DNA of 64,000 nt from Ascidiella aspersa. Lineage: Eukaryota. The translations under genes and the position numbers were made by a program. The stretch is taken from positions 27,404,001-27,468,000 of the forward strand of contig OZ004613.1 of the NCBI GenBank assembly GCA_963924565.1. Reading direction: 5' to 3'. The notes under the pieces are model-generated. The model was given only the letters and a program-made list of their open reading frames with translations. It was not told the origin of the DNA and did not search any database. Below are positions 23,243 through 57,900 of the stretch, in pieces (position 1 is the first letter of the stretch; every line of letters begins with the position of its first letter).

Positions 23243-25058
23243 TGCGCAATTAATACAACAGTCTTTTAAAATAGCAAACAACAAATAGTTTGAATTCTTT
23301 AAATTAAATATCCAATTGCCAACTCGATGCAACGTACAAAGCTCCTCAAGCTATTAGACACACACGCAGTGCAGAAAATGGGCCGTGAATGGTTTGCTCG
23401 TTATAATGCACGAGGAGTTGAAAAAAGTCAAGGGTCTCGGGAGACTAGCGATAGAGTTGCGCACGCATTCGCCTACGTGATTTTATGCAGGTCTACAAAA
23501 GTAACGCGGAAGGTGGATAGTTTCACTCTGGAAAGTAATACTCATCGTTGTAAAAATTATTTAGATATCACTTAATTCTCAGGAAGTCTTTTGTAAAAAA
23601 ACTAAATCTAGGTCGACAACTTAAGTCAAAGACGAGTCTTTTTGAATAAATAGCAAGTCAAGTTCCAGTCAAGGCGTGATTGAACAAGTCAATTCCAATG
23701 AATTCCGTGTCATAAAAATGTAAACTTTAAACTAATAAAATCGGCAAACTAGTCCGGTTCTGAGAAATAAGTCAAAAAATATCACGAAATGAAACATATA
23801 GCTACCAGACTGTTTCATGTACAAAACTTAAAATAAATTACTCATTTTTATAAAACAAATATAATGAAAGCACTTCCAAGTCATTTGTCCAACGACTTAA
23901 TATATTTCGTCTAACAAGTTAGACCACCAATGTGGCTATTATATACCGCAACGCAATTGCAACTGCAAAAATCGTTTTGTCGGTATACCTTTCTGCCCAT
24001 ATAATATTTTTATTTTTGGTGCTATAAATTAAAAACTTTACTGTTACGCAAGTGCACACACGATTTCTAAAAATAAGTATAGGTTCGTTTCACAGCCTAG
24101 CCATAAAGTGGTAACATTTTTTTCTACAGGAAAAACGTTTTTTTCCTCATTACAACTTGGTGTCCAGCGGTTACTTGGAAGTAACGCAAAACAATGTTTA
24201 CTTACAAAGCTCAAAATGTTTTTCATATTTGAATCTCATATTCAACCGTAGTAAAACAAAACATAATATCATGCTTATTTGATATATTATTTCACAGGTT
24301 TCGTATTTTTATGGCTACCGACTATTTTTGTCATGCTAAAGTCTTTTTATTGCATTTTGTCAAGTTTAAATACCCATGGGGCATGTAGTACTCAAATGTT
24401 AAATGTCGGCATATTGAAAACAATTCTTTGTGTGTGCGATCAAAGATATGTGCTGACCACTTATGTTTGCTGACATTAAAAATACTCGTGAGAACAGATT
24501 ACCTTTTTATCAGTGAACACGCACACTCGCACAGTAACAAATTTCGCGATAAAGTGCGTTTTATTGGAGTTTATACTTGATGCTTGGCTACAGTAGATGC
24601 TTTAAGTTGTAATTAATTGTTAACGATAGTGCGACCTTACTGCCAGCCTCACTGAATGTAATAAAGTATGTATAGTCTCAGTACGTATATAATTTTGTTT
24701 ACCAAACAAATACAATTATCTAAAACCGCAGAAATACGTGGGGCTACTACTAATAAATCACTTAAGCGTGAAAATTAAGTGTGGGTATCTTTATCAGATG
24801 TTAAAATAAATGTTTTCATAACAGTTGCTCACCGTTGTTTTCATAACAGTTGCTCACCGGAAGTATATGTCGCTAAGAATTATTGTTTTAGAAAATGGCT
24901 TATTGTGTTTTCTATTTTGTCGGAAAATTAGCTTCCATCACAGGAGTTGGGCGACAAATAAGTTTTTTTTCCATTAAATATTTTATAAAGCTAAAATAAG
25001 TTGTTTTGGTTATTCAATTTGTTTTTCATGTCGTTCATCTGTTCTTCGGTAGAAACAA

Positions 25059-27239
25059 TTACAATTCATACAACTGATTGTCAACTTCTCTTTTCTGATC
25101 TTCTAAATCTCTATCGCCGTATAAAACATTGTGAGCTTCTTCTTTATTGTTGTACAAAGCTTCGGTGTCTTCTTTTTTCTGATCGTTCGGTTTTGTCTGG
25201 CCGTATAAAATATTGTCGACTTCTTTTCTTTCGTCCTGATTCCACGAAGAGTAAACGGGATTGGATACAATTTCTCCTTTTTCAATATTGCTTGCAAATT
25301 CGTACGCGTTGTCAGATGCAGTTGTAATGTTTTTATCGTAACTTAAATACAAAACGTTGTTGGCCACTTCTCTTTCAACATGTAGTGCTGCGTCGAAGGG
25401 TTTTGTTTTATGTTCAGCAGACAGATTTTGCCTTTTGCGTCTTTTAGTTATGAAGCACACAACAAAGATAACTAACAAGATTGCGACTCCAGTTAAAACC
25501 AAACCAACAGCTAACCCCGTAGTGAAGGGTAACTGGCCATTCACTGGCGTTGTTTGGCGTTGAGCTGAGGTTGAGTTATGACTCGGCAAAGTAGATGGGT
25601 AGAAACTTATCGTCTGAGTATTACTTTGTACAGTTTTTATTAATGGTTTGAAGCCAGTGGTGGAAACTGCAATATCAATGACCTGCATGAAAGTTGTTGT
25701 CTGTTTTCTTGTTGAAATTAAATTCGATATTCTAGAAGTAGTACTTGCTGCTTGTGTTGATAACTTGGTGCTTGTAACAGCTATTTAAACAAAAAAGGAT
25801 CAGCACTTGGTTAGTAAATATGTTTAAAAAAACATTACTGAGATCAAGCTTAATAAAACATTCCAATCTTACTGCAATAGTCAATACTTAAAAATAAAAA
25901 AATCCTTCGATTTTTAGGTTTGTTTTAACAGGTAAAATTTTTATTCAACAGCATCATATCATCAGTGTTAAAATGCATGAAAGTTCTTTAATAGCGTCAA
26001 AAATTATTGCAGATGGAATGTAATATAAGCTTTACACAACAAAACGTAAACGATTTTACAAACTTTACCGGCAACTGAAAAGGAACTGTGATAACTCCCC
26101 CAATGTTTTGTAGTAATCTCATTCTTGGTACTTCCATCGTATCTGCTTAATCCCTCGATGTTATGAACAATAACAGGCCCTCCACTATCTTAAGGAAATT
26201 TGCCATTTTAGCTACCTAACATTACAATAAAACCTTTTGAACCATGATTGAGAAATAGAAATAATGTTGAAGGCCTTTAGTTCACTGAAATAAAATTAAA
26301 ATCTTTTCAAATACCATAATATTAATTGCGGTATTTATTTTTCTTGACTAAAATCCTGACTAGTTGCTTTATTATTGGAAACAAGTTACGAAGCAAAGTA
26401 TTTTGCCAAAAAAAGTAATTCCACGTTAAGTCACTTTCAATTAATAGCGCGCTAAGTGCAAGTGATATGCACACAAAAATAACTGTTACACTATTAAAAC
26501 ACCCTCGTCTCATTTTATCCAGACAAGTGTTTTTCGAGCAAATACCAAAACCTAAACATAAAGCATGGAAACTGATTTACGTGCACAGGTAAAAATATAG
26601 ACCCCTTGTGAAGATTTTGAACAGAAACCATGACATTCAGCTTTATGATTTTTTTGTAGATCAAATTATTATTGATTGAAATCACATCAAGTCAAGACTT
26701 TTTCAAGCAGTGTTGGACTTGAGGGTATACAAGTCATTAAATACTAATTTTTTGGCTACAGTTTCAAAAATCTAGTGTGTTATGATAAACTTGTTATTGC
26801 AATTACTTGTGATAACGCCGGCATGAATGGCCGCCTTGCAAATAGACGAGTCGGAAGTGTAAATATCGGTTCCCCAAACTCTTGTATTATCATTCCTGCA
26901 TCCTTGTGGACAGATGACAGTGAATATTTTTGAACTTTCTGAATCAGCCGTTTTACTGCAAGAAACTGCAAATAAAGTTCAATGTTACCATTATCATGAA
27001 GAAATATTTATAAAAAAAAATCATCTAAACAAAAGGTGACCACAACTGTTAACTGCTCAAGAACGCAAAATTCCTGTACACTTGTTTATAAGAAGAATTA
27101 TTTACTGAATTAATTGTCATGCTATTAGCAAATCACCTGCACTGTTTACCAATAGGGGTAACTCAATCCAAATCAATATCCATAACAGTTGTTTTGTTCT
27201 CAATCTGCCTTTCAATATAACGAAGGCAATTAAAGCCAT
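25059..27239 (-). CDS. LCCL receptor copy 1, intact (signal-LCCL-S/T stalk-TM-NxxY-repeat tail), ~367 aa
   Basis: complement(join(25059..25780,26069..26188,26807..26965,27137..27239)). [86 protein letters not shown]. Tail NVLY, NAY, NPVY, NILY, ALY, NVLY, NQLYEL. The ATG used by copies 2 and 3 is lost (TTG at 27203); an in-frame ATG lies at 27239. Confidence 0.85.
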
Positions 27240-28261
27240 ATTTACTATTTGAAATAAACTTCGTACTTATTTAATTGTCTTCAAATCAACTCTCTTCATC
27301 AATAAACAGATGCGCGGCCAGTATTTCTCCGCGGTTTTGTGCTTATTGTCGTATTTTAGTCTTTTACCTCCTGCTTTTGTAATGCAGCACAGTTCAATAA
27401 AGGTATACTTAATTTAACCGCTTGACAGGCTATATTACCTATGAATAGAGTTAGCTCCACCGGGCAACATATCAATAAATATAAATCGCTCTTCTGGTGT
27501 AAACGAAGTATAAACCGACGTTTATATTACCAATGGTTGATTTTTGACCAGATACGCGTTACAAAGAACAAAGAGGGAACGTATGACTACATCAAACTGT
27601 TCTTGCACAACATTTTACGCCCCTCATTATTCATACAACTATACTTTGTAATTATACCTACCTACACATTCTGTATACTATACATGTCTACAAGTGCATG
27701 CTGACAATATTAATAAGTGAATGCCTTTACATTGATTTAGTTTGTCGTTTATAAATTTCCCCATTAGTCTACCGATGTATACCTTTTTAAACAAGTAACT
27801 GCAGGTTCCCCATTTTCGTCGGCATTCTCGCATATACTCTATAAATTCAATCATTAAAAGGAAAATGGAAGACGATGTACAAAGTTTATTAAAAAAACGA
27901 AAAAATTATAATGATTTTTTTCTATATAGGATACCCAAATGAAGAGTTTATGTCGACTATCTTTGACGTAGTTTTGTGTAATTGGTAAAGTGATCCTTCG
28001 GAATAAAGTTCAGGCCACTTCACATAACGTGTATTCGCGAGCCATTGTACAAATTTAGTTGTACCATTTTGCTTTAAAATTCTCAAGTAAATCTAAGACT
28101 TACCAATTCTTGTTTTTATAACGCATTTCGAGTGTTGCTTAATATTTTATTGATTACAGATCATAACCTTCCAAAAAGTAAATAATAGAGTAGTTGAGTT
28201 GAGTAATTCTCACGAGTAACGTCACCTAAAAGGTATGGAACCACTGACATAAGGTCTGTAG

Positions 28262-29800: not shown

Positions 29801-32800
29801 TTAAAAGTGATTTTCGTACACTGGCGTGTTGTTTTGACTTGACTCGACATTGGCCGGGATGGTTACATATTCCACTTCTGCCTTGGAGGGCAGTTGTGGG
29901 TTCATTTCGACGTAATCCCCATCTTTGGAATGAACTGGAAAAACTGGATTGGGTTGAATGTAACCATCCTCTTCGTCAACATTTGACACTTTCCCTGTTA
30001 AAAATGCTCATATTGTTCGATTGTGTCTTTATTTGGTAAGCTTGCAAACACTAGAAAAAGGGTCGTGAAAACCAAAAGGTTGGGAACAATCGCTCACTCA
30101 TGTTGCTGTATGCCTTGACCATGGACCAATGTTCTCATTCGTGGGTCAGAGTTACAACCCGTATGATTATATTTTTTGTTGATATTTAGACTACTGAATG
30201 ACATATTGTTGCTTAAACAAATATTTTGCATTTAGATAACTTACTTTCGATATAGACATAGTTGTGGGGTTCTGATATTGCCAATGGATTTTCATTTGTA
30301 GTATCTTCTACTTGTTGGATTAATATCTGCTTCAGGCGACATCTGACACAAAGAACACAGTTCAGTATTAGTGCAAGATACTTATCGTCAGGGTTGGATC
30401 CAAGCAGTGAAAGGCATGAGGCCATTCTTCCCCTCCAAACTGTATTTTTGTCCATTTAAACTAGGCAAATGCATTTTTTCTTATGAGTTCAAATTATTGT
30501 CATACAATGTCTTGGCCCAATTTAATTAAATCGTTAAACCCAAAAGGCATCGTTCGTCCCCTCGCACCCTTCAAAATGGCAATTGGCATTTTAAACAATG
30601 TTTTTTCGCTGTGCGCGAATCGATACATCTTTGTAATGTAACTTTTTTATCGACAGTAACACCTCTGCAACCTAAAACTTTAACGAAATAAACGAACTTT
30701 AGGTTAATTTTCATGACGTTACGTTTACATTATATTTCGTGATTTCACATTTTAAAGTAACTTTTTGAAGTCAATTCGGACAAAACTTTACGGTCCACCC
30801 CCAAACAAAAATCCTAGATCCGCACGGCTTATCGGTAATAAAAACATAGGGCAACTTAATTTTTTTTATTAAACCACAGAGGAGAATTCATCAGCTTATC
30901 CAGACATAGGGATTGGGATATTACTATAACTCTATAAAGCCGCTAGGTACACTTGCGTCACGTAAGGTACTTACCCTCTACAGCGCCACCACCAAAGGGC
31001 AGCAGAGATGCACAGAATGATAAGTAGTATTGCGGATATCGCAGTTATTACTTCAACGTTCGAACGTTCATTGATGTGTGTGTTTGCTTCTGAAAATTCG
31101 GTAAAAACAAAACAAGATATACGTGAATTAAAGGTATAGTGGCCCTGAAGACAAATATGCAAATCTGATGACGTCACTGACAGTTTATACGTGATAAAAA
31201 AAATCAGTAAAACTAAAATTATAAATCTACAAACTAAAAAAATGTTAAATTTGTTCATTCTGTAGGCTATGTGATGTTATGGACTCCAGCCATAAGCCCG
31301 AAATAAGAACAACATCAACATCAAAAGGAAACAGTTCGGAATAAGACCAAAATATGTCTAACACCTTATAGCCGTAATACCGTCCATATCGAAATAAGTA
31401 AACCCGTCGAAATAAGAACAGCATCAACATCAAAAGGAAACAGTTTGGAATAAGACCAAAATATGTCTAACACCTTATAGCCGTAATACCTTCTATATCG
31501 AAATAAGGCCAAAATTTGGACATTGAGTCCTTATTCGGATGACTTTAGGACGTATTCCGGGTGGGTTTATGTCTTATTCAGACGATTTAGATCTTATGTT
31601 TTCATTATTGCGTACCGGTATTTGGCTTCATTATGTCGCTGATCTTAGTGCTATCATATTGTAGATTTTTCTGGTTTAGGATTGTTGCTTTTTAGGTATT
31701 ATTGTGTTCCCGATGTGAATTACTATTGTTTTCCTAAATATTATAATTCTAAGCACCGTCTTATTACTATTAGCGGTTGCCCCAATACCTGTCAAAGTTT
31801 GAACAGTTGAAGCCACAGACGCTGCGTTGGTTTGATTGATGAGCGGACGTGACCCGCTAGCTGTCGGCAACGAAGGAGCTAGAACTTAAACATAGCTGGT
31901 CTTAGAAAAACGAGGCCCAGTCAAAAGAGCAACCTGGATGTGTAGAATAAGAATACATCTCCACGCCCCTATTACACGTAAATGACGACAATGACTTCAA
32001 ATGGGAGCAAATATTCGTTGGACTTTCCTGTTTTGTCAAAGTCAGTCATTTATACATTCTATTCATTTAAAAGAGAAATATATTTTACCACAAAACAAGG
32101 TATCATCAGTGTCTTTATTTGAATGAATCTATCATGTCAAAATATGGCATTTTAAACGGACATTGTAATTATAGGAACAACTTAATGAAACGAGAAAATT
32201 ACAATTTATTGCATTACAAAGAAAAATAAACTAACTTTTGGAACAGGCGACAAAATGTTAAGTGCGACTTTCACGTAAAATAGAATTGTATTTGGTTGGC
32301 GCAAGTCAACAAATTATATAAGTCTTGCGTTTTAGGGGAAATTGTAGGAAATACGCGGAAAATTCACACGTTCTCTATGGTCTAACTAATTTTTTTTACG
32401 TTTAGGCGGCGAAATATTTGACTTAATTCCCAGTCAAGACATTCGTAAAATATCTGAAGTACAAGTCAAGTCTTTTCGAATAGATAACAAGTCAAATCTC
32501 AGTCCAAGGTAAGTCCCAGTAAATTCACAATTAGACCAAGTCGACTTAAGTCAAGTTAAAACTGGTAAAGTCGTCATATTATGAGCAATGATTTAAGCAA
32601 AAAAAATACTTAATGCAAGATATAGCAAGAAAGATGTTTTATGCCCGAAAATTAAGGTGAATTACCCAATGTTTGAAAAACCTGCTTGATGGAACACTTG
32701 TCCAAAAGAATTAAGTCAAGTCAGACATTTAAAATCTGCGACTTAAGTGCACTTTATTTCATTGACTTAAGTAAATACAATACTGATAGTATCACAATCC

Positions 32801-35233
32801 AAATATGCGACTACAAACGTAGTTTAAAAGCATTTTTAGAGAACATTTTTAGAGAGGTTCGAACTCACGACCTCCGTCTATACCGGGACCGTCGCTCTAC
32901 TAACTGAGCAACACAGGCTTAGAGAGGGGCGGGTCGAGAAACAACATGACACCAATACTTGATAAAATAAGGTTTTTAAAATTGCGCTTACCCTTACTGC
33001 AAGTGTAAGTGACGCTCAAGTATTTGTTCGTCGTTGAGCAATTGTTGCCAAATACATCATTCGTTGCGCTTAGCGTGCAGCTTGATTTACCGTCGCACAT
33101 CGATCTCACTTTGTTCAACACATTTGAAGTGCATAATATTATGAGTTGAATTATACCAGCTGAAATCGGACAGCTGAAATCGGAATAGTACAATTCTCAT
33201 CATGTTGAAAATGTATATTGTATCCCGTGGTAAGAATAACAAAGCCCATACAGAAGTATAGCTATCATTCTGAACCTTTCGGATATCTCTTTATTGATTT
33301 TCAACATATTGGTCGTTAAAATTGAATAAATATTTTTTTCGGAACGTTCAAACCGATCCCTAGTCTGTATCGGCTTTGATATTCTTACTACGTCTTACCA
33401 CAACCTCAGTCATTATTCTAGGAATATATTTAGGGCAAATTTATAAACGCATAGTTTTGGTGCTGTCGCTACAGATATTGCATAGGTATTAAAAACATAA
33501 TTATTTTGTTTTGATTTTGTCTTACCATCGAAACGCTTTAAAATCAACGGTAACGATAAGCATATGTTAACTACTTCGCGATGATCGTCTCGACCAATAA
33601 TTCTCAAACTGTGTTTGTAAGTTCGGAAAGAGAGTATTTGTATTACGAACAGGCATACACGCAAACATTTTAGACTTAAAAACGTACTATTCATTACACA
33701 ATAATAGTTTAAGGAAGATTGTAAAATAACTCTCTTTGTTGGTCTGTTAAAATTGTGCTGCGAAACAGTTTTTTTTAGTGTGCCGCGAGGCAAATAAGTT
33801 TGGGAACCTAGACTCTGGTTATTCATCTTTGGTTTCGCAACGGAGTTAAGTCTTTCCTTACATTAATGTATCTTTTCGTCCATAACTTGCACTCGTCACG
33901 TTAATATGATGATCTTGTAGACACTTGATTGTTAAAGTGGAACCCTCGCAAATGTTCAAGGTGTTTTGGCCTGCATTGGTAAAATAAATAAAGCATAAAA
34001 AACAGTGTTTTGTGACTGTAGTCAATGATTTTATTGAGGTGCACCTATAAGCTATTTTGACTTGGTTTTCGTAAATTAGATTAATTATTATTTAACTTGA
34101 GTCATATGCGCAAGTGACTTGATAATTAAGTGCATTAACTGAATATATTCAGTAAAGTAGGTTATTAAGTTAATTACAATGTATAAAAAATATTAAGCTA
34201 TTTCTTTCGTTATTGATGTTTGCTATGACAAGTATTGCTCAGAGTGGACAGTGTTCACCGGGTTTGAAAGTGTCCTATTTATTTTAAGTGTCAACGACGG
34301 TATTCGGATTTGCCTTGTTAAATGACTTATGCCCGAACTTAATTTATTCATGCCACAAATAACATCATGTAATGGATATTAAAATGGCATACATATTTTA
34401 ATTACCACTGTTGTTTCAGCATAGTAAAAGTAGGTGCAGGCTGTGATGTGACAAAATAAATCTTTAAAATAGCACAATCATTTCTTAATATTAAAGTTGA
34501 ATGGTGATCAAATACAGACTCGTGTGAATTACGCATGTTTAACAATAGCTGGTGTAGACCAATATGTTACACCTTAATCATACATATTTACATCAAATTG
34601 ATGTTGCCATCACATTACTAAACAGTCTAGGTCCAATCGCATACCACTTGTCTTAAATCGTCGCCAGCTGTTGTATCGCATTAATTACCGCGCCGCTCTT
34701 GTTGATAAAATTGCAATTAACATTTCAAAATCTCGACCGAAGCAAGCGCATATTGCAGCAGCCATATTCCTTAGAACTACGTCAGGTTATGCGCGGCGCT
34801 GCTTTGCATTAGATCACCTTCAAGAAAGCCGTGGTTTACTTCTGATAGTATGTTTTGTTTTTAAACTTTTCTTTAATCTGCACCGCTTTCTTTCATATTA
34901 TATTTTTTACTTTTTTATCAATTTTATTATTATTTTGCTTTGTACAGTCAAACTTTGATGTGTATGGATTTTACTTCACTTGTAGGAACGGGCGATCCCT
35001 ATAGGCAAAATATATATTCCTTTATAAAAAATCTCGTTTTACTCGGGGGTTTTAAACTTCGAACTCTATTGTCCTTATAACGAGGAACGCAAACCTGCTG
35101 TCGAATCTAAAGGAGTTTGTCATACAAAACAGTTATGTTAATAGTCAAGATACAAATTACCTGCAGCAAACTTTGCAATCCAAAGTAGATTAACCCAAAC
35201 AAATATCATGAATAGTTGCTTTAAAATCTTCAT
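29801..35233 (-). CDS. SUEL/rhamnose-binding lectin type I membrane receptor copy 1, ~310 aa
   Basis: complement(join(29801..29994,30245..30342,30975..31089,31616..31687,31789..31878,32992..33173,33862..33970,35161..35233)). Signal MKILKQLFMIFVWVNLLWIAKFAAG. RBL ICEGSTLTIKC..SASYGRKD..C..C..CDGKSSCTLSATNDVFGNNCSTTNKYLSVTYTC. TM VITAISAILLIILCISAALWWW, then CRGC. Tail YIQP, YVEM, VEYVTI, YEN. Frame open across all exons; the 72-bp stalk exon uses a weak aag acceptor. Confidence 0.85.
31300..31506 (+). repeat. ~109-bp intronic tandem duplication specific to unit 1
   Basis: gaaataagaacaacatcaacatcaaaaggaaacagtt... occurs twice here and once in unit 3 (~56474). Confidence 0.8.
33229..33390. mobile_element. 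Small hairpin MITE in RBL intron 2
   Basis: taagaataacaaagcccatacaga...tctgtatcggctttgatattctta; related pieces at ~17270-17380, ~19960-20090, ~46347-46500 and ~58346-58485. Confidence 0.6.
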
Positions 35234-37619: not shown

Positions 37620-39800
37620 TTATTCAATTTGTTTTTCATTTCGTTCATCTGTTCTTCGGTAGAAACAATTACAATTCATACAACTGATTGTCAACTTCTC
37701 TTTTCTGAGCTTCGAAATCTCTATCGCCGTATAAAACATTGTGAGCTTCTTCTTTACTGTTGTACAAAGCTTCGGTGTCTTCTTTTTTCTGATCTTTCGG
37801 TTTTGTCTGGCCGTATAAAATATTGTCGACTTCTTTTCTTTCGTCCTGATTCTACGAAGAGTAAACGGGATTGGATACAATTTCTCCTTTTTTAATATTG
37901 CCTGCAAATTCGCAGTTGTAATGTTTTTATCGTAACTTGAATACAAAACGTTGTTGGGCACTTCTCTTTCAACATGTAGTGCTGCGTCGAAGGGTTTTGT
38001 TTTATGTTCAGCAGACAGCTTTTGCCTTTTGCGTCTTCTAGTTATGAAGCACACAACAAAGATAACTAACAAGATTGCGACTCCAGTTAAAACCAAACCA
38101 ACAGCTAACCCCGTAGTGAAGGGTAACTGGCCATTTACTGGCATTGTTTGGCCTTGAGCTGAGGTTGAGTAACGAGTCGTTGAAGTAGACAGATAAAAAG
38201 CTTCCGTGTGAGGGTGAGCATTGCTTTGAACAGTTTTTATTAATGGTTTGAAGCCAGTGGTGGAAACTGCAATATCAATGACCTGCATAAAAGTTGTTGT
38301 CTGTTTTCTTGTTGAAATTAAATTCGATATTCTAGAAGTAGTACTTGCTGCTTGTGTTGATAACTTGGTGCTTGTAACTGCTAATTAAACAAAAATGATT
38401 AGTACTTGTTTAAATATATTATAAAAAACATTACTGAGATCAAGCTTAATAAAACATTCCAATCTTACTGCAATAGTCAATACTTAAAAATAAAATAATC
38501 CTTTGATTTTTAGGTTTGTTTTAACAGGTAAAATTTTTATTCAACATCATCATATCATCAGTGTTAAAATGCATGAAAGTTTTTTAATAGCGTCACAGAT
38601 TATTGCAGATGGAATGTAATATAAGCTTTACACAACAAAACGTAAACGATTTTACAAACTTTACCGGCAACTGAAAAGGAACTGTGATAACTCCCCCAAT
38701 GTTTTGTAGTAATCTCATTCTTGGTACTTCCATCGTATCTGCTTAATCCCTCGATGTTATGAACAATAACAGGCCTTCCACTATCTTAAGGAAATTTGCC
38801 ATTTTAGCTACCTAACATTACAATAAAACCTTTTGAACCATGATTGAGAAATAGAAATAATGTTGAAGGCCTTTAGTTCACTGAAATAAAATTAAAATCT
38901 TTTCAAATACCATAATATTAATTGCGGTATTTATTTTTCTTGACTAAAATCCTGACTAGTTGCTTTATTATTGGAAACAAGTTACGAAGCAAAGTATTTT
39001 GCCAAAAAAAGTAATTCCACGTTAAGTCACTTTCAATTAATAGCGCGCTAAGTGCAAGTGATATGCACACAAAAATAACTGTTACACTATTAAAACACCC
39101 TCGTCTCATTTTATCCAGAGAAGTGTTTTTCGAGCAAATACCAAAACCTAAACATAAAGCATGGAAACTGATTTACGTGCACAGGTAAAAATATAGACCC
39201 CTTGTGAAGATTTTGAACAGAAACCATGACATTTAGCTTTATGATTTTGTTGAGATCAAATTAATATTGATTGAAATCACATCAAGTCAAGACGTTTTCA
39301 AGCAGTGTTGGACTTGAGTGTATACAAGTCATTAAATACTAATATTTTGGCTACAGTTTCAAAAATCTAGTGTGTTATGAAAAACTTGTTATTGCAATTA
39401 CTTGTGATAACGCCGGCATGAATGGCCGCCTTGCAAATAGACGAGTCGGAAGTGTAAATATCGGTTCCCCAAACTCTTGTACTATCATTCCTGCATCCTT
39501 GTGGACAGATGACAGTGAATATTTGAACTTTCTGAATCAGCTTTTTTACTGCAAGAAACTGCAAATAAAGTTCAATGTTACCATTATCATGAAGAAATAT
39601 TTATAAAAACAATCATCTAAAGTAAACAAAAGGTGACCTCAACTGTTTACTGTTCAAGAACGCAAAATTCCTGTAGACTTGTTTATAGGAAGAAATATTT
39701 ACTGGCATAATTGTCATGCTATTAGCAAATTACCTGCACTGTTTACCAATAGGGGTAACGCAGTCCAAACCAATATCCACAAGAGTTGTTTTGTCTTCAT
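37620..39800 (-). pseudogene. LCCL receptor copy 2 with two frameshifts
   Basis: Exons 39734..39800 (MKTKQLLWILVWTALPLLVNSA), 39402..39558 (157 bp versus 159 bp: 2-bp deletion), 38665..38784 and 37620..38380 (16-bp deletion near 37912 shifts the tail frame). Confidence 0.8.
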
Positions 39801-41382
39801 TGCACGTTGTATCTGCCTTTCAATATGACGAAAGCAATTAAAGCCATAGATACTATTTGAAATAAACTTCTTACTTAATTAATTGTCTTCAAATCAACTC
39901 TTTCCTCGATAAAGGGATGCGCGGACAGTATTTGCCAAATATTTGTGATTATTGTCTTATTTTAGTCTTGTTTTGTCATATTTTAGTCCAACACTTCCTG
40001 CTTTTGTGATGCAGCAGAGTTCAATAAAGTTATGCTTAACTGAACTGCTTGACAGGCTATTGCCCGGTTTATATCAATCAAAAAATCATGACTACATCTG
40101 TTCCACAACCTTTTACGCTCCTTCATTATTCATGCAACTATGCGTAACTAAACCTACCTACGCTTTCTGTATACGTGTCTACAAGTGCGTGCCGACAATA
40201 ATAATAAGTTAATGTTTTTATATTGATTTAGTTTGTCGTTTATAAATTTCCCCATTAGTCTACCGATGTATACCTTTTTAAAAAAGTAACTGTAGGTTTC
40301 CTATGTTCGTCGGAATTCTCGCATATACTATAAATGCAACCATTAAAAGTAAAATGAAACAGGATGTACAAAGCTTCTCAAAAAGTAAAAAAAAAATGAA
40401 AAAAAAATAATGTTTTTTTTCTATGTAGGATACCCAAATGAAGAGTTTATGTCGACTATCTTTGACGTAATTTTGTGTAATTGGTGAAGTGAAAACAGGG
40501 ATCCTTCGGAATAAAATTCAGGCCACTTCACATAACGTTTATTCGCGACCCATTGCACAAACTTTAGTTGTACCATTTTGCTTTAAAATTCTCAAGTAAA
40601 TCTAAAACATACCAATTCTTGTTTTTTTATAGTGCATTTCGAGTGTTGCTTAATATTTTATTGATTACAGATCATAACCTTCCAAAAAGTAAATAATAGA
40701 GTAGTTGAATTAAGTAATTCTCACGAGTAACGTCACTTAAAAGGTATGGAACCACTGACATAAGGTCTGTAGCATTGTTGTAAAGACTTAAGGTAATGAC
40801 TTGACTTAAACTGTTTTAAATGACTTGAATTGACTTTAAGTCTTTTCAAATTACTCAGGTTGGAATGAACTGTTTTCCTTAAGTATGTTTTTTAAATTGA
40901 GCTATTTCTCAAAATGTTTGCACATAAAACAAATATTGTCTTTTTCTTACTTTTTAGTTCATTTATTGTTCATAATCGTACTATTTTAAAAGTTATAATA
41001 GTTTAACGTTTTATTTTTATGACAAGGACGTGACTTGAAGTTAACTTGCTCTAATTATGACTTGGCTGGGATTATTATGACTTGGTTATTAATTCAAAAA
41101 GACTTGCCTTGGACTTCAGTTATTTTAAAATGACATGTTTACCACACTGGTCTGTAGTATGATATTACTAATCAAGTAACAAAATTCCTGGCCATAATTT
41201 GACATCGCAGTAGCATACCTCGATTTATTGTCACTATTAAAGGTTACAAATAATAGCACAAAAACGCAAATGACAACGTCACAGGCACTAATGCCACAAA
41301 GACAGCACAAAAAACACAAAGCTAACATAGAGTAGGTGATAAGGCAAAAGAGTTGAAGTGGGTGTTCTGTGTTAATGTACAG

Positions 41383-42332: not shown

Positions 42333-45300
42333 TTAAAAGTGATTTTGGTACACTGGCGTGTTGCTTTGACTTGACTCGACATTGGCAGGGATGGTTACAT
42401 ATTCTACTTCTGCCTTGGAGGGCAGTTGTGGGTTCATTTCGACGTAATCCCCATCTTTCGAATGAACTGGAAATACTGGATTGGGTTGAATGTAACCATC
42501 CTCTTCGTCAACATTTGACACTTTCCCTGTTAAAAATGCTCATATTGTTCGATTGTGTCTTTATTTGGTAAGCTTACAAACACTAGAAAAAGGGTCGTGA
42601 AAACCAAAAGGTTGGTAAGAATCGCTCACTCATGTTGCTGTATGCCTTGACCATGGACCAATGTTCTCATTCGTGGATCAGAGTTACCACCCGTATGATT
42701 ATATTTTTTGTTGATATTTAGACTACTGAATGACATATTGTTGCTTAAACAAATATTTTGCATTTAGATAACTTACTTTCGATATAGACATAGTTGTGGG
42801 GTTCTGATATTGCCAATGGATTTTCATTTGTAGTATCTTCTACTTGTTGGATTAATATCTGCTTCAGGCGACATCTGACACAAAGAACACAGTTCAGTAT
42901 TAGTGCAAACAGCCATTCTTCCCCTCCAAACTATGTTTTTGTCCATTTAAACTAGGCAAATGCATTTTTTCTTATGAGTTCAAATTATTGTCATACAAAT
43001 GCCCAATTTAATTAAATCGTTAGACCCAAAAGGCATCGTTCGTCCCCTCGCACCCTTCAAAATGGCAATTGGCATTTTAAACAATGTTTTTTCGCTGTGC
43101 GCGAATCGATACATCTTTGTAATGTAACTTTTTTATTGACAGTAACACCTCTGCAACCTAAAACTTTAACGAAATAAACGAACTTTAGGTTATATTTTCA
43201 TGACGTTACGTTTACATGATATTTCGTGTCATTTCGGAAAAAACTTTACGGTCCACCCCCAAATAAAAATCCTAGATCGGCACGGCTTATCGGTAATAAA
43301 AACATAAGGCAACTTAATTTTTTTTATTAAACCACAGAGGAGAATTCATCAGCTTATCCAGACAAAGGGATTGGGATATTAATATAACTCTATACAGCCG
43401 CTAAGTACACTTGCGTCACGTAAGGTACTTACCCTCTACAGCGCCACCACCAAAGGGCAGCAGAGATGCACAGGATGATAAGTAGTATTGCGGATATCGC
43501 AGCTATTACTGCAACGTTCGAACGTTCATTGATGTGTGTGTTTGCATCTGAAAATTCGGTAAAAACAAAACAAGATATACGTGAATTAAAGGTATAGTGG
43601 CCCTGAAGACAAATATGCAAATCTGATGACGTCACTGACAGTTTATACGTGATAAAAAAATCAGTAAAACTAAAATTATAAATCTACAAACTAAAAAAAT
43701 GTTAAATTTGTTCATTCTGTAGGCTATGTGATGTTAAGGACTCCAGCCATAAGACCGAAATAAGAATAACATTAAAATCAAAAATAAACACAGTTCGGAT
43801 GAAGATATGTCTAATACCTTATAGCCGTAACACCTTCTATATCGAAATAAGACCAAAATTTGGACATTGAGTCCTTATTCGGATGACTTTAGGACGTATT
43901 CCGGGTGGGTTTATGTCTTATTCAGACGATTTCGATCTTATGTTGTCATTATTGCGTACCGGTATTTGGCTTCATTATGTCGCTGATCTTAGTGCTATCA
44001 TATTGTAGATTTTTCTGGTTTAGGATTGTTGCTTTTTAGGTATTATTGTGTTCCCGATGTGAATTACTATTGTTTTCCCAAATATTATAATTCTAAGCAC
44101 CGTCCTATTTCTATTCGCGTTTGCCCCAATACCTGTCAAAGTTTGAACAGTTGGAGCCACAGACGCGGCGTTACTTTGATTGGTTAGCGGATGTGACTCG
44201 TTAGCTGTCGCTAACGAAGGAGCTAGAACTTAAACAGAGATGGGTTTAGAAAAACGAGACCCGAAGCACACTAAAGGTGTAAAATAAGAATATATCTCCT
44301 TGCCCGTATTACACTTAAATTACGACAATAACTCCAAATGGGAGCAAATATTCTTTAGACTTTCCTGTTTTGGTCAAAGTCAGTCATTTGTAAGTTCTAG
44401 TCATTAAAAAGGGAAATATATTTTACCACAAAATAAGGCATTATAAGTTTCTCTATTTGAATGAATCTACCATGTCAAAATATGGCATTTTAATCGGGCA
44501 TTGTAATTATAGGAATAACGTAATGAAACGAGAAAATTACAATATATTGTATTACAAAGAAAAACAACCTTTTAGAACAGGCGACAAAACGGGGTTGACT
44601 CTAATCAACAAATTATATAAGTGTATAGCTTTAGGGGAAAGCATGAAATACGTGGACATACTTCATTCATCGTTTTTGAAGTTCGCACGTTCTCTAAAGT
44701 CTAAATAATGTTTACGTTCAGGCGGCGAAATCTTTTGCGTTAGGCATGAGACAATATTTCACTGATACACAGTAGTATCAATAAAGAAAAACCTTTGGTT
44801 ACAACATTTCTGCATACCTTTTACAAAAAGTAATTTTAAATGTCAGATTGCCAAAATTATTTTTATAACCCAAGCATCGCCTAACGTTAGTTGTTGAAGG
44901 ATCTTGGGTTACTGGATTCGCAGAAGTGAATTGACTGGTGCTTGAAAGCGACATGGCGGAAGAGTGACGACACTAGAAGCCACGCTGAGTATTGCAAAAC
45001 AACGTGTGAACATTTATTATTTGTAAACCTGCTTGGGTACCCTATGCACGGATCTGTAACGTAGCTTGATAATGAATTGCAAAGCTAAAAAGGTCGAGTA
45101 TATCGCATCTCCTTGATAACGACGTTTCGATATGAACTTGTCTCATTTTCAAACTTGAACTTGTAACAATAACTGAAGATGATAAAAGTTTATATCGAAA
45201 CGTCTTAATCAAGATGATTTCAACCTACTCGGCCTTTTTGGCTTTGCAATTCAATATCAAAAAGCAATCCTACAAGGTCATACTTTAGAATGGTGTAACC

Positions 45301-51152: not shown

Positions 51153-52653
51153 TCAATGACATGCATAAAAGTTGTTCTGTTTTCTTGTTGAAATTAAATT
51201 CGATATTGTAGGAGTAGTACTTGCTGCTTGTGTTGCTAACTTGGTGCTTGTAACTGCTAATTAAACAAAAATGATGAGTACTTGTTTAAATATATTATAA
51301 AAACATTACTGAGATCAAGCTTAGTAAAACATTCCAATCTTACTGCAATAGTCAATACTTGAAAATAAAAAAATCCTTCGATTTTTAGGTTTGTTTTAAC
51401 AGGTAAAATTTTTATTCAACAGCATCATATCATCAGTGTTAAAATGCATGAACGTTCTGTAATAGCGTCACAAATTATTGCAGATGGAATGTAATACAAG
51501 CTTTACACAACAAAACGTAAAAGATTTTACAAACTTTACCGGCAACTGAAAAGGAACTGTGATAACTCCCCCAATGTTTTGTAGTAATCTCATTCTTGGT
51601 ACTTCCATCGTATCTGCTTAATCCCTCGATGTTATGAACAATAACAGGCCCTCCACTATCTTAAGGAAATTTGCCATTTTAGCTACCTAACATTACAATA
51701 AAACCTTTTGAACCATGATTTAGAAATAGAAATAATGTTGAAGGCCTTTAGTTCACTGAAATCAAATTAAAATCTTTTCAAATACCATAATATTAATTGC
51801 GGTATTTATTTTTCTTGACTAAAATCCTGACGAGTTGCTTTATTATTGGAAACAAGTTACGAATCAAAGTCGTTTGCATAAAAAAGTAATTCCATATGCA
51901 CACAAAAATATTTGATATGCACACAAAATAATTGTTACACTATTAAAGCACCCTCGTCTCATTTTATCCAGACAAGTGTTTTTCGAGCAAATACCAAAAC
52001 CTAAACATAAAGCATGGAAACTGATTTACGTGCACAGGTAAAAATATAGACCCCTTGTGAAGATTTTGAACAGAAACCATGACATTTAGCTTTATGATTT
52101 TTTGAGATCAAATTATTATTGATTGAAATCACATCAAGTCAAGACTTTTTCAAGCAGTGTTGGACTTGAGTGTATACAAGTCATTAAATACTATTTTTTG
52201 GCTTCTGTTTCAAATATCTAGTGTGTTATGAAAAACTTGTTATTGCAATTACTTGTGATAACGCCGGCATGAATGGCCGCCTTGCAAATAGACGAGTCAC
52301 AAGTGTAAATATCGGTTCCCCAAACTCTTGTACGATCATTCCTGCATCCTTGTGGACAGATGACAGTGAATACTTTCGAACTTTCTGAATCAGCCGTTTT
52401 ACTGCAAGAAACTGCAAATAAAGTTCAATGTTACCATTATCATGAAGAAATATTTATAAAAACAATCATCTAAAGTAAACAAAAGGTGACCACAACTGTT
52501 TACTGTTCAAGAACGCAAAATTCCTGTAGACTTGTTTATAGGAATTAATATTTACTGGCATAATTGTCATGCTATAAGCAAATCACCTGCACTGTTTACC
52601 AATAGGGGTAACGCAGTCCAAACCAATATCCACAAGAGTTGTTTTGTCTTCAT
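51153..52653 (-). CDS. LCCL copy 3: predicted secreted truncated form (or pseudogene); out-of-frame TM/tail remnant continues to ~50540
   Basis: complement(join(51153..51256,51540..51659,52253..52411,52587..52653)). Signal and LCCL are intact. A 2-bp deletion near 51176 gives ..STRKQNNFYACH* before the TM. A second stop lies at 50609 in the old tail frame. Confidence 0.65.
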
Positions 52654-54970: not shown

Positions 54971-57900
54971 TTAAAAGTGATTTTCGTACACTGGCGTGTT
55001 GTTTTGACTTGACTCGACATTGGCCGGGATGGTTACATATTCCACTTCTGCCTTGGAGGGCAGTTGTGGGTTCATTTCGACGTAATCCTCATCTTTGGAA
55101 TGAACTGGAAAAACTGGATTGGGTTGAATGTAACCATCCTCTTCGTCAACATTTGACACTTTCCCTGTTAAAAATGCTCATATTGTTCGATTGTGTCTTT
55201 ATTTGGTAAGCTTGCAAACACTAGAAAAAGGGTCGTGAAAACCAAAAGGTTGGGAACAATCGCTCACTCATGTTGCTGTATGCCTTGACCATGGACCAAT
55301 GTTCTCATTCGTGGGTCAGAGTTACAACCCGTATGATTATATTTTTTGTTGATATTTAGACTACTGAATGACATATTGTTGCTTAAACAAATATTTTGCA
55401 TTTAGATAACTTATACTTTCGATATAGACATAGTTGTGGGGTTCTGATATTGCCAATGGATTTTCATTTGTAGTATCTTCTACTTGTTGGATTAATATCT
55501 GCTTCAGGCGACATCTGACACAAAGAACACAGTTCAGTATTAGTGCAAGATACTTATCGTCAGGGTTGGATCCAAGCAGTGGAAGGCATGAGGCCATTCT
55601 TCCCCTCCAAACTGTATTTTTGTCCATTTAAACTAGGCAAATGCATTTTTTCTTATGAGTTCAAATTATTGTCATACAATGTCTTGGCCCAATTTAATTA
55701 AATCGTTAAACCCAAAAGGCATCGTTCGTCCCCTCGCACCCTTCAAAATGGCAATTGGCATTTTAAACAATGTTTTTTCGCTGTGCGCGAATCGATACAT
55801 CTTTGTAGTGTAACTTTTTTATCGACAGTAACACCTCTGAAACCTTAAACTTTAACGAAATAAACGAACTTTAGGTTAATTTTCATGACGTTACGTTTAC
55901 ATGATATTTCGTGATTTCACATTTTAAAGTAACTTTTTGAAGTCATTTCGAAAAAAACTTTACGGTCCACCCCCAAAAAAAATCCTAGATCCGCACGGCT
56001 TATCGGTAATAAAAACATAGGGCAACTTAATTTTTTTTTTTATTAAACCACAGAGGAGAATTCATCAGCTTATCCAGACATAGGGATTGGGATATTACTA
56101 TAACTCTATAAAGCCGCTAAGTACACTTGCGTCACGTAAGGTACTTACCCTCTACAGCGCCACCACCAAAGGGCAGCAGAGATGCACAGGATGATAAGTA
56201 GTATTGCGGATATCGCAGTTATTACTTCAACGTTCGAACGTTCATTGATGTGTGTGTTTGCTTCTGAAAATTCGGTAAAAACAAAACAAGATATACGTGA
56301 ATTAAAGGTATAGTGGCCCTGAAGACAAATATGCAAATCTGATGACGTCACTGACAGTTTATACGTGATAAAAAAAATCAGTAAAACTAAAATTATAAAT
56401 CTACAAACTAAAAAAATGTTAAATTTGTTCATTCTGTAGGCTATGTGATGTTATGGACTCCAGCCATAAGCCCGAAATAAGAACAACATCAACATCAAAA
56501 GGAAACAGTTTGGAATAAGACCAAAATATGTCTAACACCTTATAGCCGTAATACCTTCTATATCGAAATAAGGCCAAAATTTGGACATTGAGTCCTTATT
56601 CGGATGACTTTAGGACGTATTCCGGGTGGGTTTATGTCTTATTCAGACGATTTAGATCTTATGTTTTCATTATTGCGTACCGGTATTTGGCTTCATTATG
56701 TCGCTGATCTTAGTGCTATCATATTGTAGATTTTTCTGGTTTAGGATTGTTGCTTTTTAGGTATTATTGTGTTCCCGATGTGAATTACTATTGTTTTCCT
56801 AAATATTATAATTCTAAGCACCGTCTTATTACTATTAGCGGTTGCCCCAATACCTGTCAAAGTTTGAACAGTTGAAGCCACAGACGCTGCGTTGGTTTGA
56901 TTGATGAGCGGACGTGACCCGCTAGCTGTCGGCAACGAAGGAGCTAGAACTTAAACATAGCTGGTCTTAGAAAAACGAGGCCCAGTCAAAAGAGCAACCT
57001 GGATGTGTAGAATAAGAATACATCTCCACGCCCCTATTACACGTAAATGACGACAATGACTTCAAATGGGAGCAAATATTCGTTGGACTTTCCTGTTTTG
57101 TCAAAGTCAATCATTTATACATTCTATTCATTTAAAAGAGAAATATATTTTACCACAAAACAAGGTATCATCAGTGTCTTTATTTGAATGAATCTATCAT
57201 GTCAAAATATGGCATTTTAAACGGACATTGTAATTATAGGAACAACGTAATGAAACGAGAAAATTACAATTTATTGCATTACAAAGAAAAATAAACTAAC
57301 TTTTGGAACAGGCGACAAAATGTTAAGTGCGACTTTCACGTAAAATAGAATTGCATTTGGTTGGCGCAAGTCAGCAAATTATATAAGTCTTGCGTTTTAG
57401 AGGAAATTAGGAAATACGAGGACATAATTCAGTCTTTATTAGTCCTTTGTTAAATTGACACGTTCTCTATTGTCTAAATAATTTTTTTTACGTTTAGGCG
57501 GCGAAATATTTGACTTAATTCCCAGTCAAGACATTCGTAAAATATCTGAAGTACAAGTCAAGTCTTTTCGAATAGATAACAAGTCAAATCTCAGTCCAAG
57601 GTAAGTCCCAGTAAATTCACAATTAGACCAAGTCGACTTAAGTCAAGCTTTTGTCATAGAAATAAACTTTTAAGTTAAAACTGGTAAATTCGTCATATTA
57701 TGAGCAATGATTTAAGCAAAAAAAATACTTAATGCAAGATATAGCAAGAAAGATGTTTTATGCCCGAAAATTAAGGTGAATTACTCAATGTTTGAAAAAC
57801 CTGCTTGATGGAACACTTGTCCAAAAGAATTAAGTCAAGTCAGACATTTAAAATCTGCGACTTAAGTGCACTTTATTTCATTGACTTAAGTAAATACAAT

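What the first reader, a model, noticed from the sequence alone, without database searches (positions are those of the whole stretch)
29801..31089. RBL receptor tail resembles a built-in LAT/Gab-type adaptor: CxxC plus YxxP, YxxM, VxYxxI and YxN
Seen: after the TM the spliced product reads WWWRCRGCR, then DGYIQP, DYVEMNP, VEYVTI and PVYENHF. All motifs are kept in all three copies (YEN becomes YQN in copy 2, still YxN). Known: juxtamembrane CxxC is the palmitoylation signature of LAT, NTAL, PAG and LIME; pYxxM binds PI3K p85, pYxN binds GRB2, VxYxxI/L fits ITIM/SHP2 sites, and YxxP binds Crk/Nck. Inference: a lectin receptor that combines activating and inhibitory docking sites.
Basis: partly seen in the sequence, partly recalled or inferred. 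Interest (0 to 1): 0.8.

Follow-up and report, generated by a model that had tools for sequence, protein, structure and literature searches.

The report
Lectin receptor with shared tyrosine tail
Three near-identical neighbouring genes of a probable sea squirt encode a small membrane sugar-binding receptor whose tyrosine-rich inner tail is a cassette shared with dozens of other lectin receptor genes in the same genome, so it is probably a signalling or uptake tail, but no expression or function has been shown.

Summary
Seven GT-AG exons with matching phases give a 286-codon type I protein: signal peptide, one RBL/SUEL domain, Ser/Thr stalk, TM helix and a roughly 105-residue tail. All seven exons are intact in three tandem copies.

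That the three copies keep the motifs says little. Tail exons differ no less than the introns around them (10/406 against 51/1423 bases).

Distant paralogs are more informative. The last exon belongs to a tail cassette shared with a C-type-lectin receptor array on contig C2 and with the neighbouring WxxW-repeat receptor.
- **Conserved across these:** Tyr1 (acidic-G-Y-Φ-x-P-N-P), Tyr2 (Y-Φ-x-Φ) and, in long tails, a C-terminal Y-x-N/D.
- **Found only in the three RBL copies:** the CxxC, the Met of YxxM, and the ITIM context.

The one RNA run was about 6% read and gave no read on six of the seven exons and no splice joint. No relatives were found outside this genome.

Verdict: a real, probably functional tyrosine-motif tail. 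The LAT/Gab "built-in adaptor, activating plus inhibitory" reading is only an analogy. Other agents of this scan had already described the C2 array and its tails; the RBL and WxxW carriers are new here.

The parts
35161..35233 (-). Exon 1, copy 1: start codon and signal peptide (24 codons + 1 nt), GT donor
33862..33970 (-). Exon 2: first half of the RBL/SUEL lectin domain (…YGRKD)
   Evidence: (PF02140, weak on this half)
32992..33173 (-). Exon 3: second half of the RBL/SUEL domain, including the loop that varies between copies
   Evidence: (PF02140 E 1.4e-11)
31789..31878 (-). Exon 4: Ser/Thr-rich stalk
30975..31089 (-). Exon 5: TM helix (31051-30986) followed by R-C-R and 2 nt of the Gly codon; first Cys of the CxxC at 30982-30980
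30245..30342 (-). Exon 6: second Cys of the CxxC (30341-30339), basic/acidic stretch, N-Y-V-Y-I (Tyr codons 30260-30258 and 30254-30252); exon found only in the three copies
29801..29994 (-). Exon 7: shared tail cassette plus stop. Y-I-Q-P-N-P at 29962-29945; Y-V-E-M at 29914-29903; V-E-Y-V-T-I at 29875-29858; Y-E-N at 29818-29810; stop at 29803-29801
42333..43547 (-). Copy 2 tail exons (E5 43547-43433, E6 42874-42777, E7 42526-42333), splice sites kept
54971..56263 (-). Copy 3 tail exons (E5 56263-56149, E6 55514-55417, E7 55164-54971), splice sites kept

Best explanation
Each of the three tandem genes encodes a 286-residue type I membrane lectin. It has a signal peptide, one rhamnose/galactose-binding (SUEL-type) domain with a loop that differs between copies, a Ser/Thr stalk, one TM helix and a roughly 105-residue tail with six tyrosines.

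The last exon is a phase-1 'tyrosine tail cassette'. This genome also attaches it to a large array of C-type-lectin receptors (contig C2) and to the adjacent WxxW-repeat receptor.

The most likely mechanism is as follows. Multivalent glycan ligands cluster the receptor. Src-type kinases phosphorylate the acid-flanked tyrosines. SH2 proteins dock on them: a Crk/Nck/Abl-type on Y-Φ-x-P, a Grb2-type on the C-terminal Y-x-N, and an unspecified partner on the second Y-Φ-x-Φ.

Shown: the gene anatomy, homology of the tail to the other tails, which residues are conserved, and presence of SH2 domains in the genome.

Inferred: expression, phosphorylation, partner identity, and any palmitoylation of the juxtamembrane cysteines.
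For: - Coherent 7-exon model with AG/GT at every intron and fitting phases, intact in three copies.
- SUEL_Lectin match on the head.
- Genome search with the last exon gave 45 matches: 3 own copies, 41 on C2 at 5.87-7.00 Mb, and 1 just beyond the window. The reverse search with a C2 tail hits the RBL exon at E 0.023.
- Pairwise BLASTP gave 4e-8, 1e-7 and 2e-7.
- C2 loci carry Lectin_C heads and the neighbour carries Mucin2_WxxW.
- In the 30 loci fetched, Tyr1 and the following P-N-P are present in 30 of 30, and Tyr2 in 28 of 30 (Phe in L014 and L017).
- Of 6 non-RBL long tails in alignment A1, 4 end in Y-x-N and 2 in Y-x-D.
- The degenerate pattern for G-Y-Φ-x-P-N-P gave 43 genome hits against 7 for the reversed control.
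- Tail-exon acceptors are phase 1 in 10 of the 11 CTLD tails for which the filter found a candidate acceptor (12 examined), as in the RBL gene. The RBL acceptor itself did not pass the polypyrimidine filter.
- Heads diverge while tails stay constant: exon 3 is 84.7% and 93.6% identical between copies, tail exons 97-100%.
- 35 SH2 matches in the genome.
Against: - No RNA support. Run X3 has no depth on six of the seven exons and no joint, with only about 6% of the run read and the tissue unknown. The two bins that hold exon 3 carry RNA reads but lie in very-high-DNA-depth sequence.
- No relative outside this genome was found, so ortholog conservation is untested.
- The hits were found by similarity to the motif region, so invariance of Y-x-x-P-N-P among them is partly ascertainment. 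The WxxW neighbour has Y-L-Q-T-Q-P and Y-V-E-S instead.
- Y-Φ-x-Φ and N-P-x-Φ also fit sorting or PTB signals that need no phosphorylation.
- Between copies 1 and 2 the tail shows 5 synonymous against 4 non-synonymous changes, which is too few to show constraint.
Confidence: 0.45

Rival explanations
1. An endocytic or phagocytic uptake receptor. The conserved G/D-Y-Φ-x-Φ would act as an AP-2 sorting signal. The E-x-G-Y-Φ-x-P-N-P-Φ-F stretch would act as a PTB/FERM-F3 ligand, as layilin's ESG(F/W)V + N(D/E)IY talin-binding module does. The tail would then link bound glycans to clathrin or the cytoskeleton without phosphotyrosine signalling.
For: Tyr2 has a hydrophobic residue at +3 in most family tails: YVEF, YIEF, YIEL, YITL, YLRF, YVEM. 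N-P is invariant after Tyr1 in 30 of 30 loci. Passages of PMC2132847 describe layilin, a type I C-type-lectin membrane protein, with talin-binding ESG(F/W)V + N(D/E)IY and YXXΦ motifs, and suggest an uptake role. The family consensus E-(S/N/G)-G-Y-V-x-P-N-P-V-F resembles that module with one extra residue.
Against: - The aromatic position that is F/W in layilin is Tyr in every family tail seen, never Phe or Trp, which suggests the hydroxyl matters.
- The residue after N-P-x varies (F, L or P), so it is not a canonical NPxY/F.
- The C-terminal site keeps Asn at +2 but has His at +3 in the RBL genes, which fits Y-x-N better than Y-x-x-Φ.
- Neither the exon nor the profile matched any PDB chain.
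- The layilin resemblance is a 10-11-residue motif with an indel, not a tested homology.
Confidence: 0.3
2. One reading: a raft-targeted, palmitoylated LAT/Gab-like scaffold. It would combine activating sites (p85 on YxxM, GRB2 on YxN, Crk on YxxP) with an inhibitory ITIM (SHP2) in one lectin receptor.
For: R-C-R-G-C-R follows the TM helix directly. V-E-Y-V-T-I fits the ITIM pattern and Y-V-E-M fits YxxM. CXXC is the palmitoylation motif of LAT, LIME, NTAL and PAG (passages of PMC2803307).
Against: - The CxxC, the Met and the ITIM context are confined to three copies that are 96-99% (copy 3) or about 96% (copy 2) identical in the flanking non-coding DNA as well.
- The only diverged TM-exon homolog reads WW-RRRTTARH with no Cys.
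- 0 of 6 non-RBL long tails have an ITIM context, and no other tail has Met at +3.
- The ectodomain is not short.
Confidence: 0.1
3. Recently duplicated, unexpressed or decaying gene copies whose motif matches have no function.
For: No RNA read on six of the seven exons and no splice joint. Exon and intron divergence between copies are similar. No relatives were found outside the genome.
Against: All 7 exons, splice sites and frames are intact in 3 of 3 copies. The tyrosines are conserved in much older paralogous tails. The head loop has diversified while the tail stayed constant.
Confidence: 0.1

Closest known systems
Myeloid C-type lectin receptors with an integral hemITAM (Dectin-1, CLEC-2); oyster CgCLec-TM1 and CgCLec-HTM
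   Same: A membrane lectin whose own tail carries an acid-preceded tyrosine motif. Dectin-1 is described with a tri-acidic DEDG before its motif (passage of PMC11624271), and the RBL tail reads D-E-E-D-G-Y. Oyster membrane C-type lectins with hemITAM tails associate with Syk (passages of PMC13027682).
   Different: The head is an RBL/SUEL domain, not a CTLD. The topology is type I. Position +3 of Tyr1 is Pro and of Tyr2 is Met, so YxxL/I is not met. No homology has been shown.
Layilin (type I C-type-lectin membrane protein, talin-binding tail)
   Same: Type I lectin receptor with short repeated tail motifs. ESG(F/W)V + N(D/E)IY resembles the family's E-x-G-Y-V-x-P-N-P-V-F. YXXΦ motifs are present in both.
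   Different: One residue longer. Tyr replaces F/W and Phe/Leu replaces the final Tyr. The head is different. No sequence-search support.
Transmembrane adaptor proteins LAT, NTAL/LAB, PAG/Cbp, LIME
   Same: Juxtamembrane CxxC and several tyrosine motifs, including Y-x-N.
   Different: Those proteins have a short extracellular part, whereas this one has a lectin domain and a stalk. The CxxC is not conserved in the nearest paralog. No family match.
EVA1C / EVA-1 and latrophilins (membrane proteins with RBL-type domains)
   Same: An RBL/galactose-binding lectin domain on a membrane protein. EVA1C is described as a membrane protein with two such domains (passage of PMC8277382). That latrophilins carry one is recalled, together with the abstract of PMC4408839 in the listing.
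   Different: One domain rather than two, no GPCR part, and no Pfam family found on the tail exon. Relationship of the heads was not tested.
The C-type-lectin receptor array of this same genome (contig C2), described by earlier agents of this scan
   Same: Same last-exon tail cassette, same phase, same order of tyrosine motifs.
   Different: Different head (RBL against CTLD), different TM exon and middle exon, and a different chromosome-scale contig.

Membership tests
RBL / SUEL-type lectin domain proteins | Match to the SUEL_Lectin profile (PF02140) with the cysteine pattern and the YGR / KYL motifs | tested here: met
   Exon 3 open frame scores E 1.4e-11, 45 bits, above the 31.4-bit cut-off. 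The exon 2 frame is weak (E 8e-4, 20.1 bits). YGR and KYL are present. The 'DPC' position reads NNC in copies 1 and 3 and DPC in copy 2.
Transmembrane adaptor proteins (LAT/NTAL/PAG/LIME) | Short extracellular domain | tested here: not met
   The ectodomain holds a lectin domain and a stalk, exons 2-4. The feature is defined in passages of PMC2803307.
Transmembrane adaptor proteins (LAT/NTAL/PAG/LIME) | Juxtamembrane CXXC that is palmitoylated | tested here: inconclusive
   C-R-G-C is present across the exon 5/6 junction but absent in the only diverged TM-exon homolog. Acylation is not testable here.
Transmembrane adaptor proteins (LAT/NTAL/PAG/LIME) | Sequence relationship to a known member | tested here: not met
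   No Pfam family on the last-exon frame at E up to 1. No PDB chain for the exon or the profile.
hemITAM receptors | Single YxxL/I preceded by acidic residues | tested here: not met
   The acidic D-E-E-D-G is present, but +3 is Pro (Tyr1) or Met (Tyr2). Some CTLD-array tails do read D-E-A-G-Y-I-T-L.
ITAM | YxxL/I - 6 to 12 residues - YxxL/I | tested here: not met
   Twelve residues separate Y-I-Q-P and Y-V-E-M, but neither +3 residue is Leu or Ile.
ITIM | (I/V/L/S)xYxx(I/V/L), with SHP-1/2 recruitment | tested here: inconclusive
   V-E-Y-V-T-I fits the pattern. 0 of 6 non-RBL long tails keep that context. Phosphatase binding is not testable here.
Tail cassette of this genome's lectin receptor array | C-terminal phase-1 exon with acidic-G-Y-Φ-x-P-N-P, then G/D-Y-Φ-x-Φ, optionally E-Y and Y-x-N/D | tested here: met
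Layilin-type talin-binding tails | ESG(F/W)V followed by N(D/E)IY | tested here: not met
   The RBL tail reads E-D-G-Y-I-Q-P-N-P-V-F. The pattern is similar, but it has an extra residue, Tyr for F/W and Phe for the final Tyr.

The most novel reading that the evidence does not exclude
This genome has a portable signalling exon. One phase-1 tail cassette with an invariant acidic-G-Y-Φ-x-P-N-P site, a second Y-Φ-x-Φ and a Y-x-N has been moved onto at least three unrelated glycan-binding heads (C-type lectin, RBL, WxxW repeats). The result would be a germline-encoded, fast-diversifying lectin-receptor system with one common phosphotyrosine output. That would be an invertebrate-chordate counterpart of the vertebrate hemITAM/ITAM lectin receptors, and possibly related in origin to the DEDG-Y hemITAM or to the layilin tail module.
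Probability: 0.25. Interest if true: 0.7.

Novelty: new variant of a known kind. Interest (0 to 1): 0.45.

Why it matters
The rhamnose-binding lectins listed in the review whose passages I read are all secreted (PMC13027682). The membrane proteins with this domain that I could name are EVA1C and latrophilins. A single-pass RBL receptor with its own conserved tyrosine tail, in variable-head/constant-tail tandem copies, would be a candidate pattern-recognition receptor of a close invertebrate relative of vertebrates.

The same tail exon sits on C-type-lectin and WxxW heads. That gives a defined, testable module for how lectin recognition is wired to the cell interior in this lineage. It also offers a case of exon-level head/tail recombination in an innate receptor family.

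Tried and rejected
**RNA evidence.** The only RNA run offered (X3) gave nothing on six of the seven exons and no splice joint; the exon 3 bins carry reads but lie in very-high-DNA-depth sequence.

**Relatives outside the genome.**
- Pfam on the last exon: none.
- PDB with the exon and with the 16-tail profile: none at E up to 10.
- Profile search of 1.84 billion representatives: 0 at E up to 0.001. A 62-position profile of short motifs has little power there, and not even this genome's own proteins appeared, so the blank says little.
- Word search with the 64-residue exon: no candidate. It sees only proteins of 35-112 residues.

**Conservation among the three copies as evidence.** Rejected, because exons and non-coding flanks diverge alike.

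**Other sites matching the degenerate pattern.** Of 9 such sites outside the array and the window, only 1 (L073, C2 at 8.13 Mb) is a true two-motif tail.

**Layilin homology.** Kept only as a resemblance.

**Organism.** Not named by any tool. A GH6 match on contig C5 (28.1 bits, just over the cut-off) fits a tunicate. The link between GH6 and tunicate cellulose synthase is recalled, not tested.

**Literature.** The papers found by the two RBL searches show no membrane RBL receptor with a tyrosine tail in their titles and abstract starts. I read passages of only one of them (PMC13027682), which lists only secreted RBLs. I did not read the others in full. No supplementary file was asked for.
Full report
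**What is there**

The window is AT-rich (GC 0.32-0.38), has no N and is intron-bearing. It holds three tandem units of about 12.6 kb. Each unit has an LCCL-domain membrane gene and, downstream on the minus strand, an RBL gene.

For copy 1, the rulers and the numeric check give seven exons:
- E1 35233-35161 (Met and signal peptide)
- E2 33970-33862 and E3 33173-32992 (one SUEL/RBL domain; PF02140 E 1.4e-11 on E3)
- E4 31878-31789 (Ser/Thr stalk)
- E5 31089-30975 (TM helix 31051-30986, then R-C-R)
- E6 30342-30245
- E7 29994-29801 (with the stop)

Every intron starts GT and ends AG, the phases fit (1, 2, 1, 1, 2, 1), and the sum is 861 nt, that is 286 codons plus the stop.

**Is the splice real?**

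There is no direct evidence. One RNA run of the same species label was offered. About 6 in 100 of it was read and 71 reads were laid. The bins that hold E1, E2 and E4-E7 have no depth, and no joint was seen in the RNA run. Most RNA reads fall in bins whose DNA depth in runs X1 and X2 is in the thousands to tens of thousands, which I take for repeats. That includes the two bins that hold E3. This does not show silence, because the tissue is unknown and sampling was shallow.

The two DNA runs hold the locus. X2 carries the copy-2 base at 29927.

**What the three copies tell**

All seven exons occur three times with splice sites kept. The units are young, however.
- Copy 1 against copy 3 shows 19/1533 non-coding differences and 2/406 exonic differences in the tail region.
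- Copy 1 against copy 2 shows 51/1423 and 10/406 (the exon bounds there were 1-2 nt off the final model).
- Within whole codons, copies 1 and 2 differ by 5 synonymous and 4 non-synonymous changes.

So "all motifs are kept in all three copies" is true but is what recent duplication gives.

The lectin exon E3, by contrast, is only 84.7% (copy 2) and 93.6% (copy 3) identical, with indels. The loop between the third and fourth cysteine differs in all three copies. Copy 2 has the D-P-C form where copies 1 and 3 have N-N-C. The pattern is variable head, constant tail.

**The informative comparison: old paralogs**

A six-frame search of the whole assembly (308.6 Mb, 75 contigs) with the last exon gave 45 matches. 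Three are the copies themselves, one lies about 10 kb beyond the window on the same contig, and 41 lie on contig C2 between 5.87 and 7.00 Mb. The reverse search with a C2 tail returns the RBL exons at E 0.023. Pairwise BLASTP gives 4e-8, 1e-7 and 2e-7.

The C2 genes are type I receptors with Lectin_C heads. The neighbour on C7 has Mucin2_WxxW repeats. Candidate acceptors of the tail exon are in phase 1 in 10 of the 11 CTLD tails for which my filter found a candidate (12 examined). That matches the phase of the RBL acceptor, which itself did not pass the polypyrimidine filter.

The WxxW neighbour also shares the TM exon (64% identity, E 1.3e-5). It is the only other match in the genome (4 matches, 3 of them the copies themselves). 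E6 has no match beyond the three copies.

**Which residues hold**

In the 30 loci fetched (read):
- Tyr1 sits in an acidic run followed by G-Y-Φ-x-P-N-P in 30 of 30.
- Tyr2 (G/D-Y-Φ-x-Φ, mostly Y-V-E-F) is Tyr in 28 of 30 and Phe in 2.

These loci were found through similarity to that very region, so the invariance is partly ascertainment. The WxxW tail keeps both tyrosines but reads Y-L-Q-T-Q-P and Y-V-E-S.

Among the six non-RBL long tails aligned in A1:
- four have a third E/N-Y;
- four end in [V/M]-Y-x-N and two in V-Y-Q-D;
- none has an ITIM context.

No tail outside the RBL copies has Met at +3 of Tyr2. The juxtamembrane of the WxxW gene reads WW-RRRTTARH, without Cys, and the CTLD TM exons seen also lack a CxxC.

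A degenerate DNA pattern for G-Y-Φ-x-P-N-P hits 43 places against 7 for the reversed control. Of these, 31 are in the C2 array and 3 in the window. Of nine other places fetched, one is a further two-motif tail.

**How it most likely works**

The anatomy is that of a clustering-activated lectin receptor. It has a multicopy, diversifying sugar-binding head, a stalk, one helix and a disordered tail. The tyrosines are acid-flanked and conserved as Tyr rather than as any aromatic residue.

I therefore put phosphotyrosine docking first (0.45): Y-Φ-x-P as a Crk/Nck/Abl-type site and Y-x-N as a Grb2-type site. These specificities are recalled textbook motifs and were not tested. SH2 domains are present (35 matches, a lower bound, with two open frames holding tandem SH2 pairs).

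The main rival (0.3) is an uptake receptor.
- Y-Φ-x-Φ is also the AP-2 signal.
- The family consensus E-x-G-Y-V-x-P-N-P-V-F resembles layilin's talin-binding ESG(F/W)V + N(D/E)IY (passages of PMC2132847).
- Against this, the first aromatic is strictly Tyr, the residue after N-P-x is variable, and Asn is retained (with His at +3) at the last site.

The two readings can coexist.

The model comprises raft targeting through a palmitoylated CxxC, p85 on YxxM, and an ITIM opposing the activating sites. It rests on features confined to the three young copies. It also fails the "short extracellular domain" feature of LAT-type adaptors (passages of PMC2803307).

**Comparison with what is known**

Integral-motif lectin receptors are well known. 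Dectin-1 has a DEDG tri-acidic stretch before its hemITAM (passage of PMC11624271), and the RBL tail has D-E-E-D-G-Y, but the +3 residue is wrong for a hemITAM. Oyster membrane C-type lectins with hemITAM tails bind Syk (passages of PMC13027682). The same review lists only secreted RBLs. EVA1C is a membrane protein with two such domains (passage of PMC8277382).

Earlier agents of this scan had already described the C2 array as a sea-squirt C-type-lectin receptor array with interchangeable tyrosine tails, and had called the "built-in adaptor" idea an analogy. I reached the array independently before reading those notes.

What is new here is that the same cassette also sits on an RBL head and a WxxW head on another contig, and the sorting of this tail's motifs into old and private ones. 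A GH6 match fits a tunicate, by recalled knowledge.

**Verdict**

It is a new variant of a known kind (a membrane lectin with a tyrosine-motif tail). Interest is moderate, limited by the absence of expression, ortholog and biochemical evidence.

Noticed in passing
window 37623-39878 (also about 24858-27363 and 50333-52822), minus strand: Each 12.6-kb unit also holds an LCCL-domain type I membrane gene (PF03815, E 7e-18). Its tail region is open in two frames and carries repeated V-x-N-x-x-Y units, which recall layilin's N(D/E)IY repeat.
   Followed up: partly
L035 = G000:C7:27478001-27488000, minus strand (about 10 kb beyond the window end): A gene with at least four Mucin2_WxxW repeat exons (two scanned, E about 2e-20 each). 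It shares the TM exon (64% identity) and the tail (BLASTP 2e-7) with the RBL genes but has no CxxC. This looks like a head swap on a common TM-plus-tail backbone.
   Followed up: partly
window 32992-33173, 46114-46302, 58101-58299: The loop between the third and fourth cysteine of the RBL domain differs in length and sequence in all three copies. Copy 2 has the canonical D-P-C where copies 1 and 3 have N-N-C. Exon 3 is 84.7% and 93.6% identical while introns and tail exons are more alike.
   Followed up: partly
L052, L055, L057, L065 (G000:C2 6.45-6.59 Mb): Some C-type-lectin array tails end D-E-A-G-Y-I-T-L-N. This fits the acidic-G-Y-x-x-L hemITAM pattern described for Dectin-1 much better than the RBL tail does.
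   Followed up: no
window about 33226-33407 (intron between E2 and E3); also 31136-31327, 31520-31711, 31904-32095, 32288-32671: Very high word depth in both DNA runs (up to about 74,000 against about 60-140 nearby), and most of the RNA reads laid fall in such bins. I take these for high-copy interspersed repeats inside the introns.
   Followed up: no
G000:C5:19613851-19614090: A single Glyco_hydro_6 match (28.1 bits, just over the cut-off) in an animal-like genome. It is consistent with the tunicate cellulose synthase gene (recalled knowledge).
   Followed up: no
G000:C1:3416139-3416708 and C1:31715643-31716230: Two long open frames (606 and 608 residues) that each hold two SH2 domains in tandem without introns. 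These are candidate Syk-, SHP- or p85-like partners.
   Followed up: no
L033 3247-3593 (G000:C2:6208247-6208593), minus strand: A long-form tail whose final Y-Q-N motif lies in another frame than its first three motifs. This is either a frameshifted copy or a further intron.
   Followed up: no
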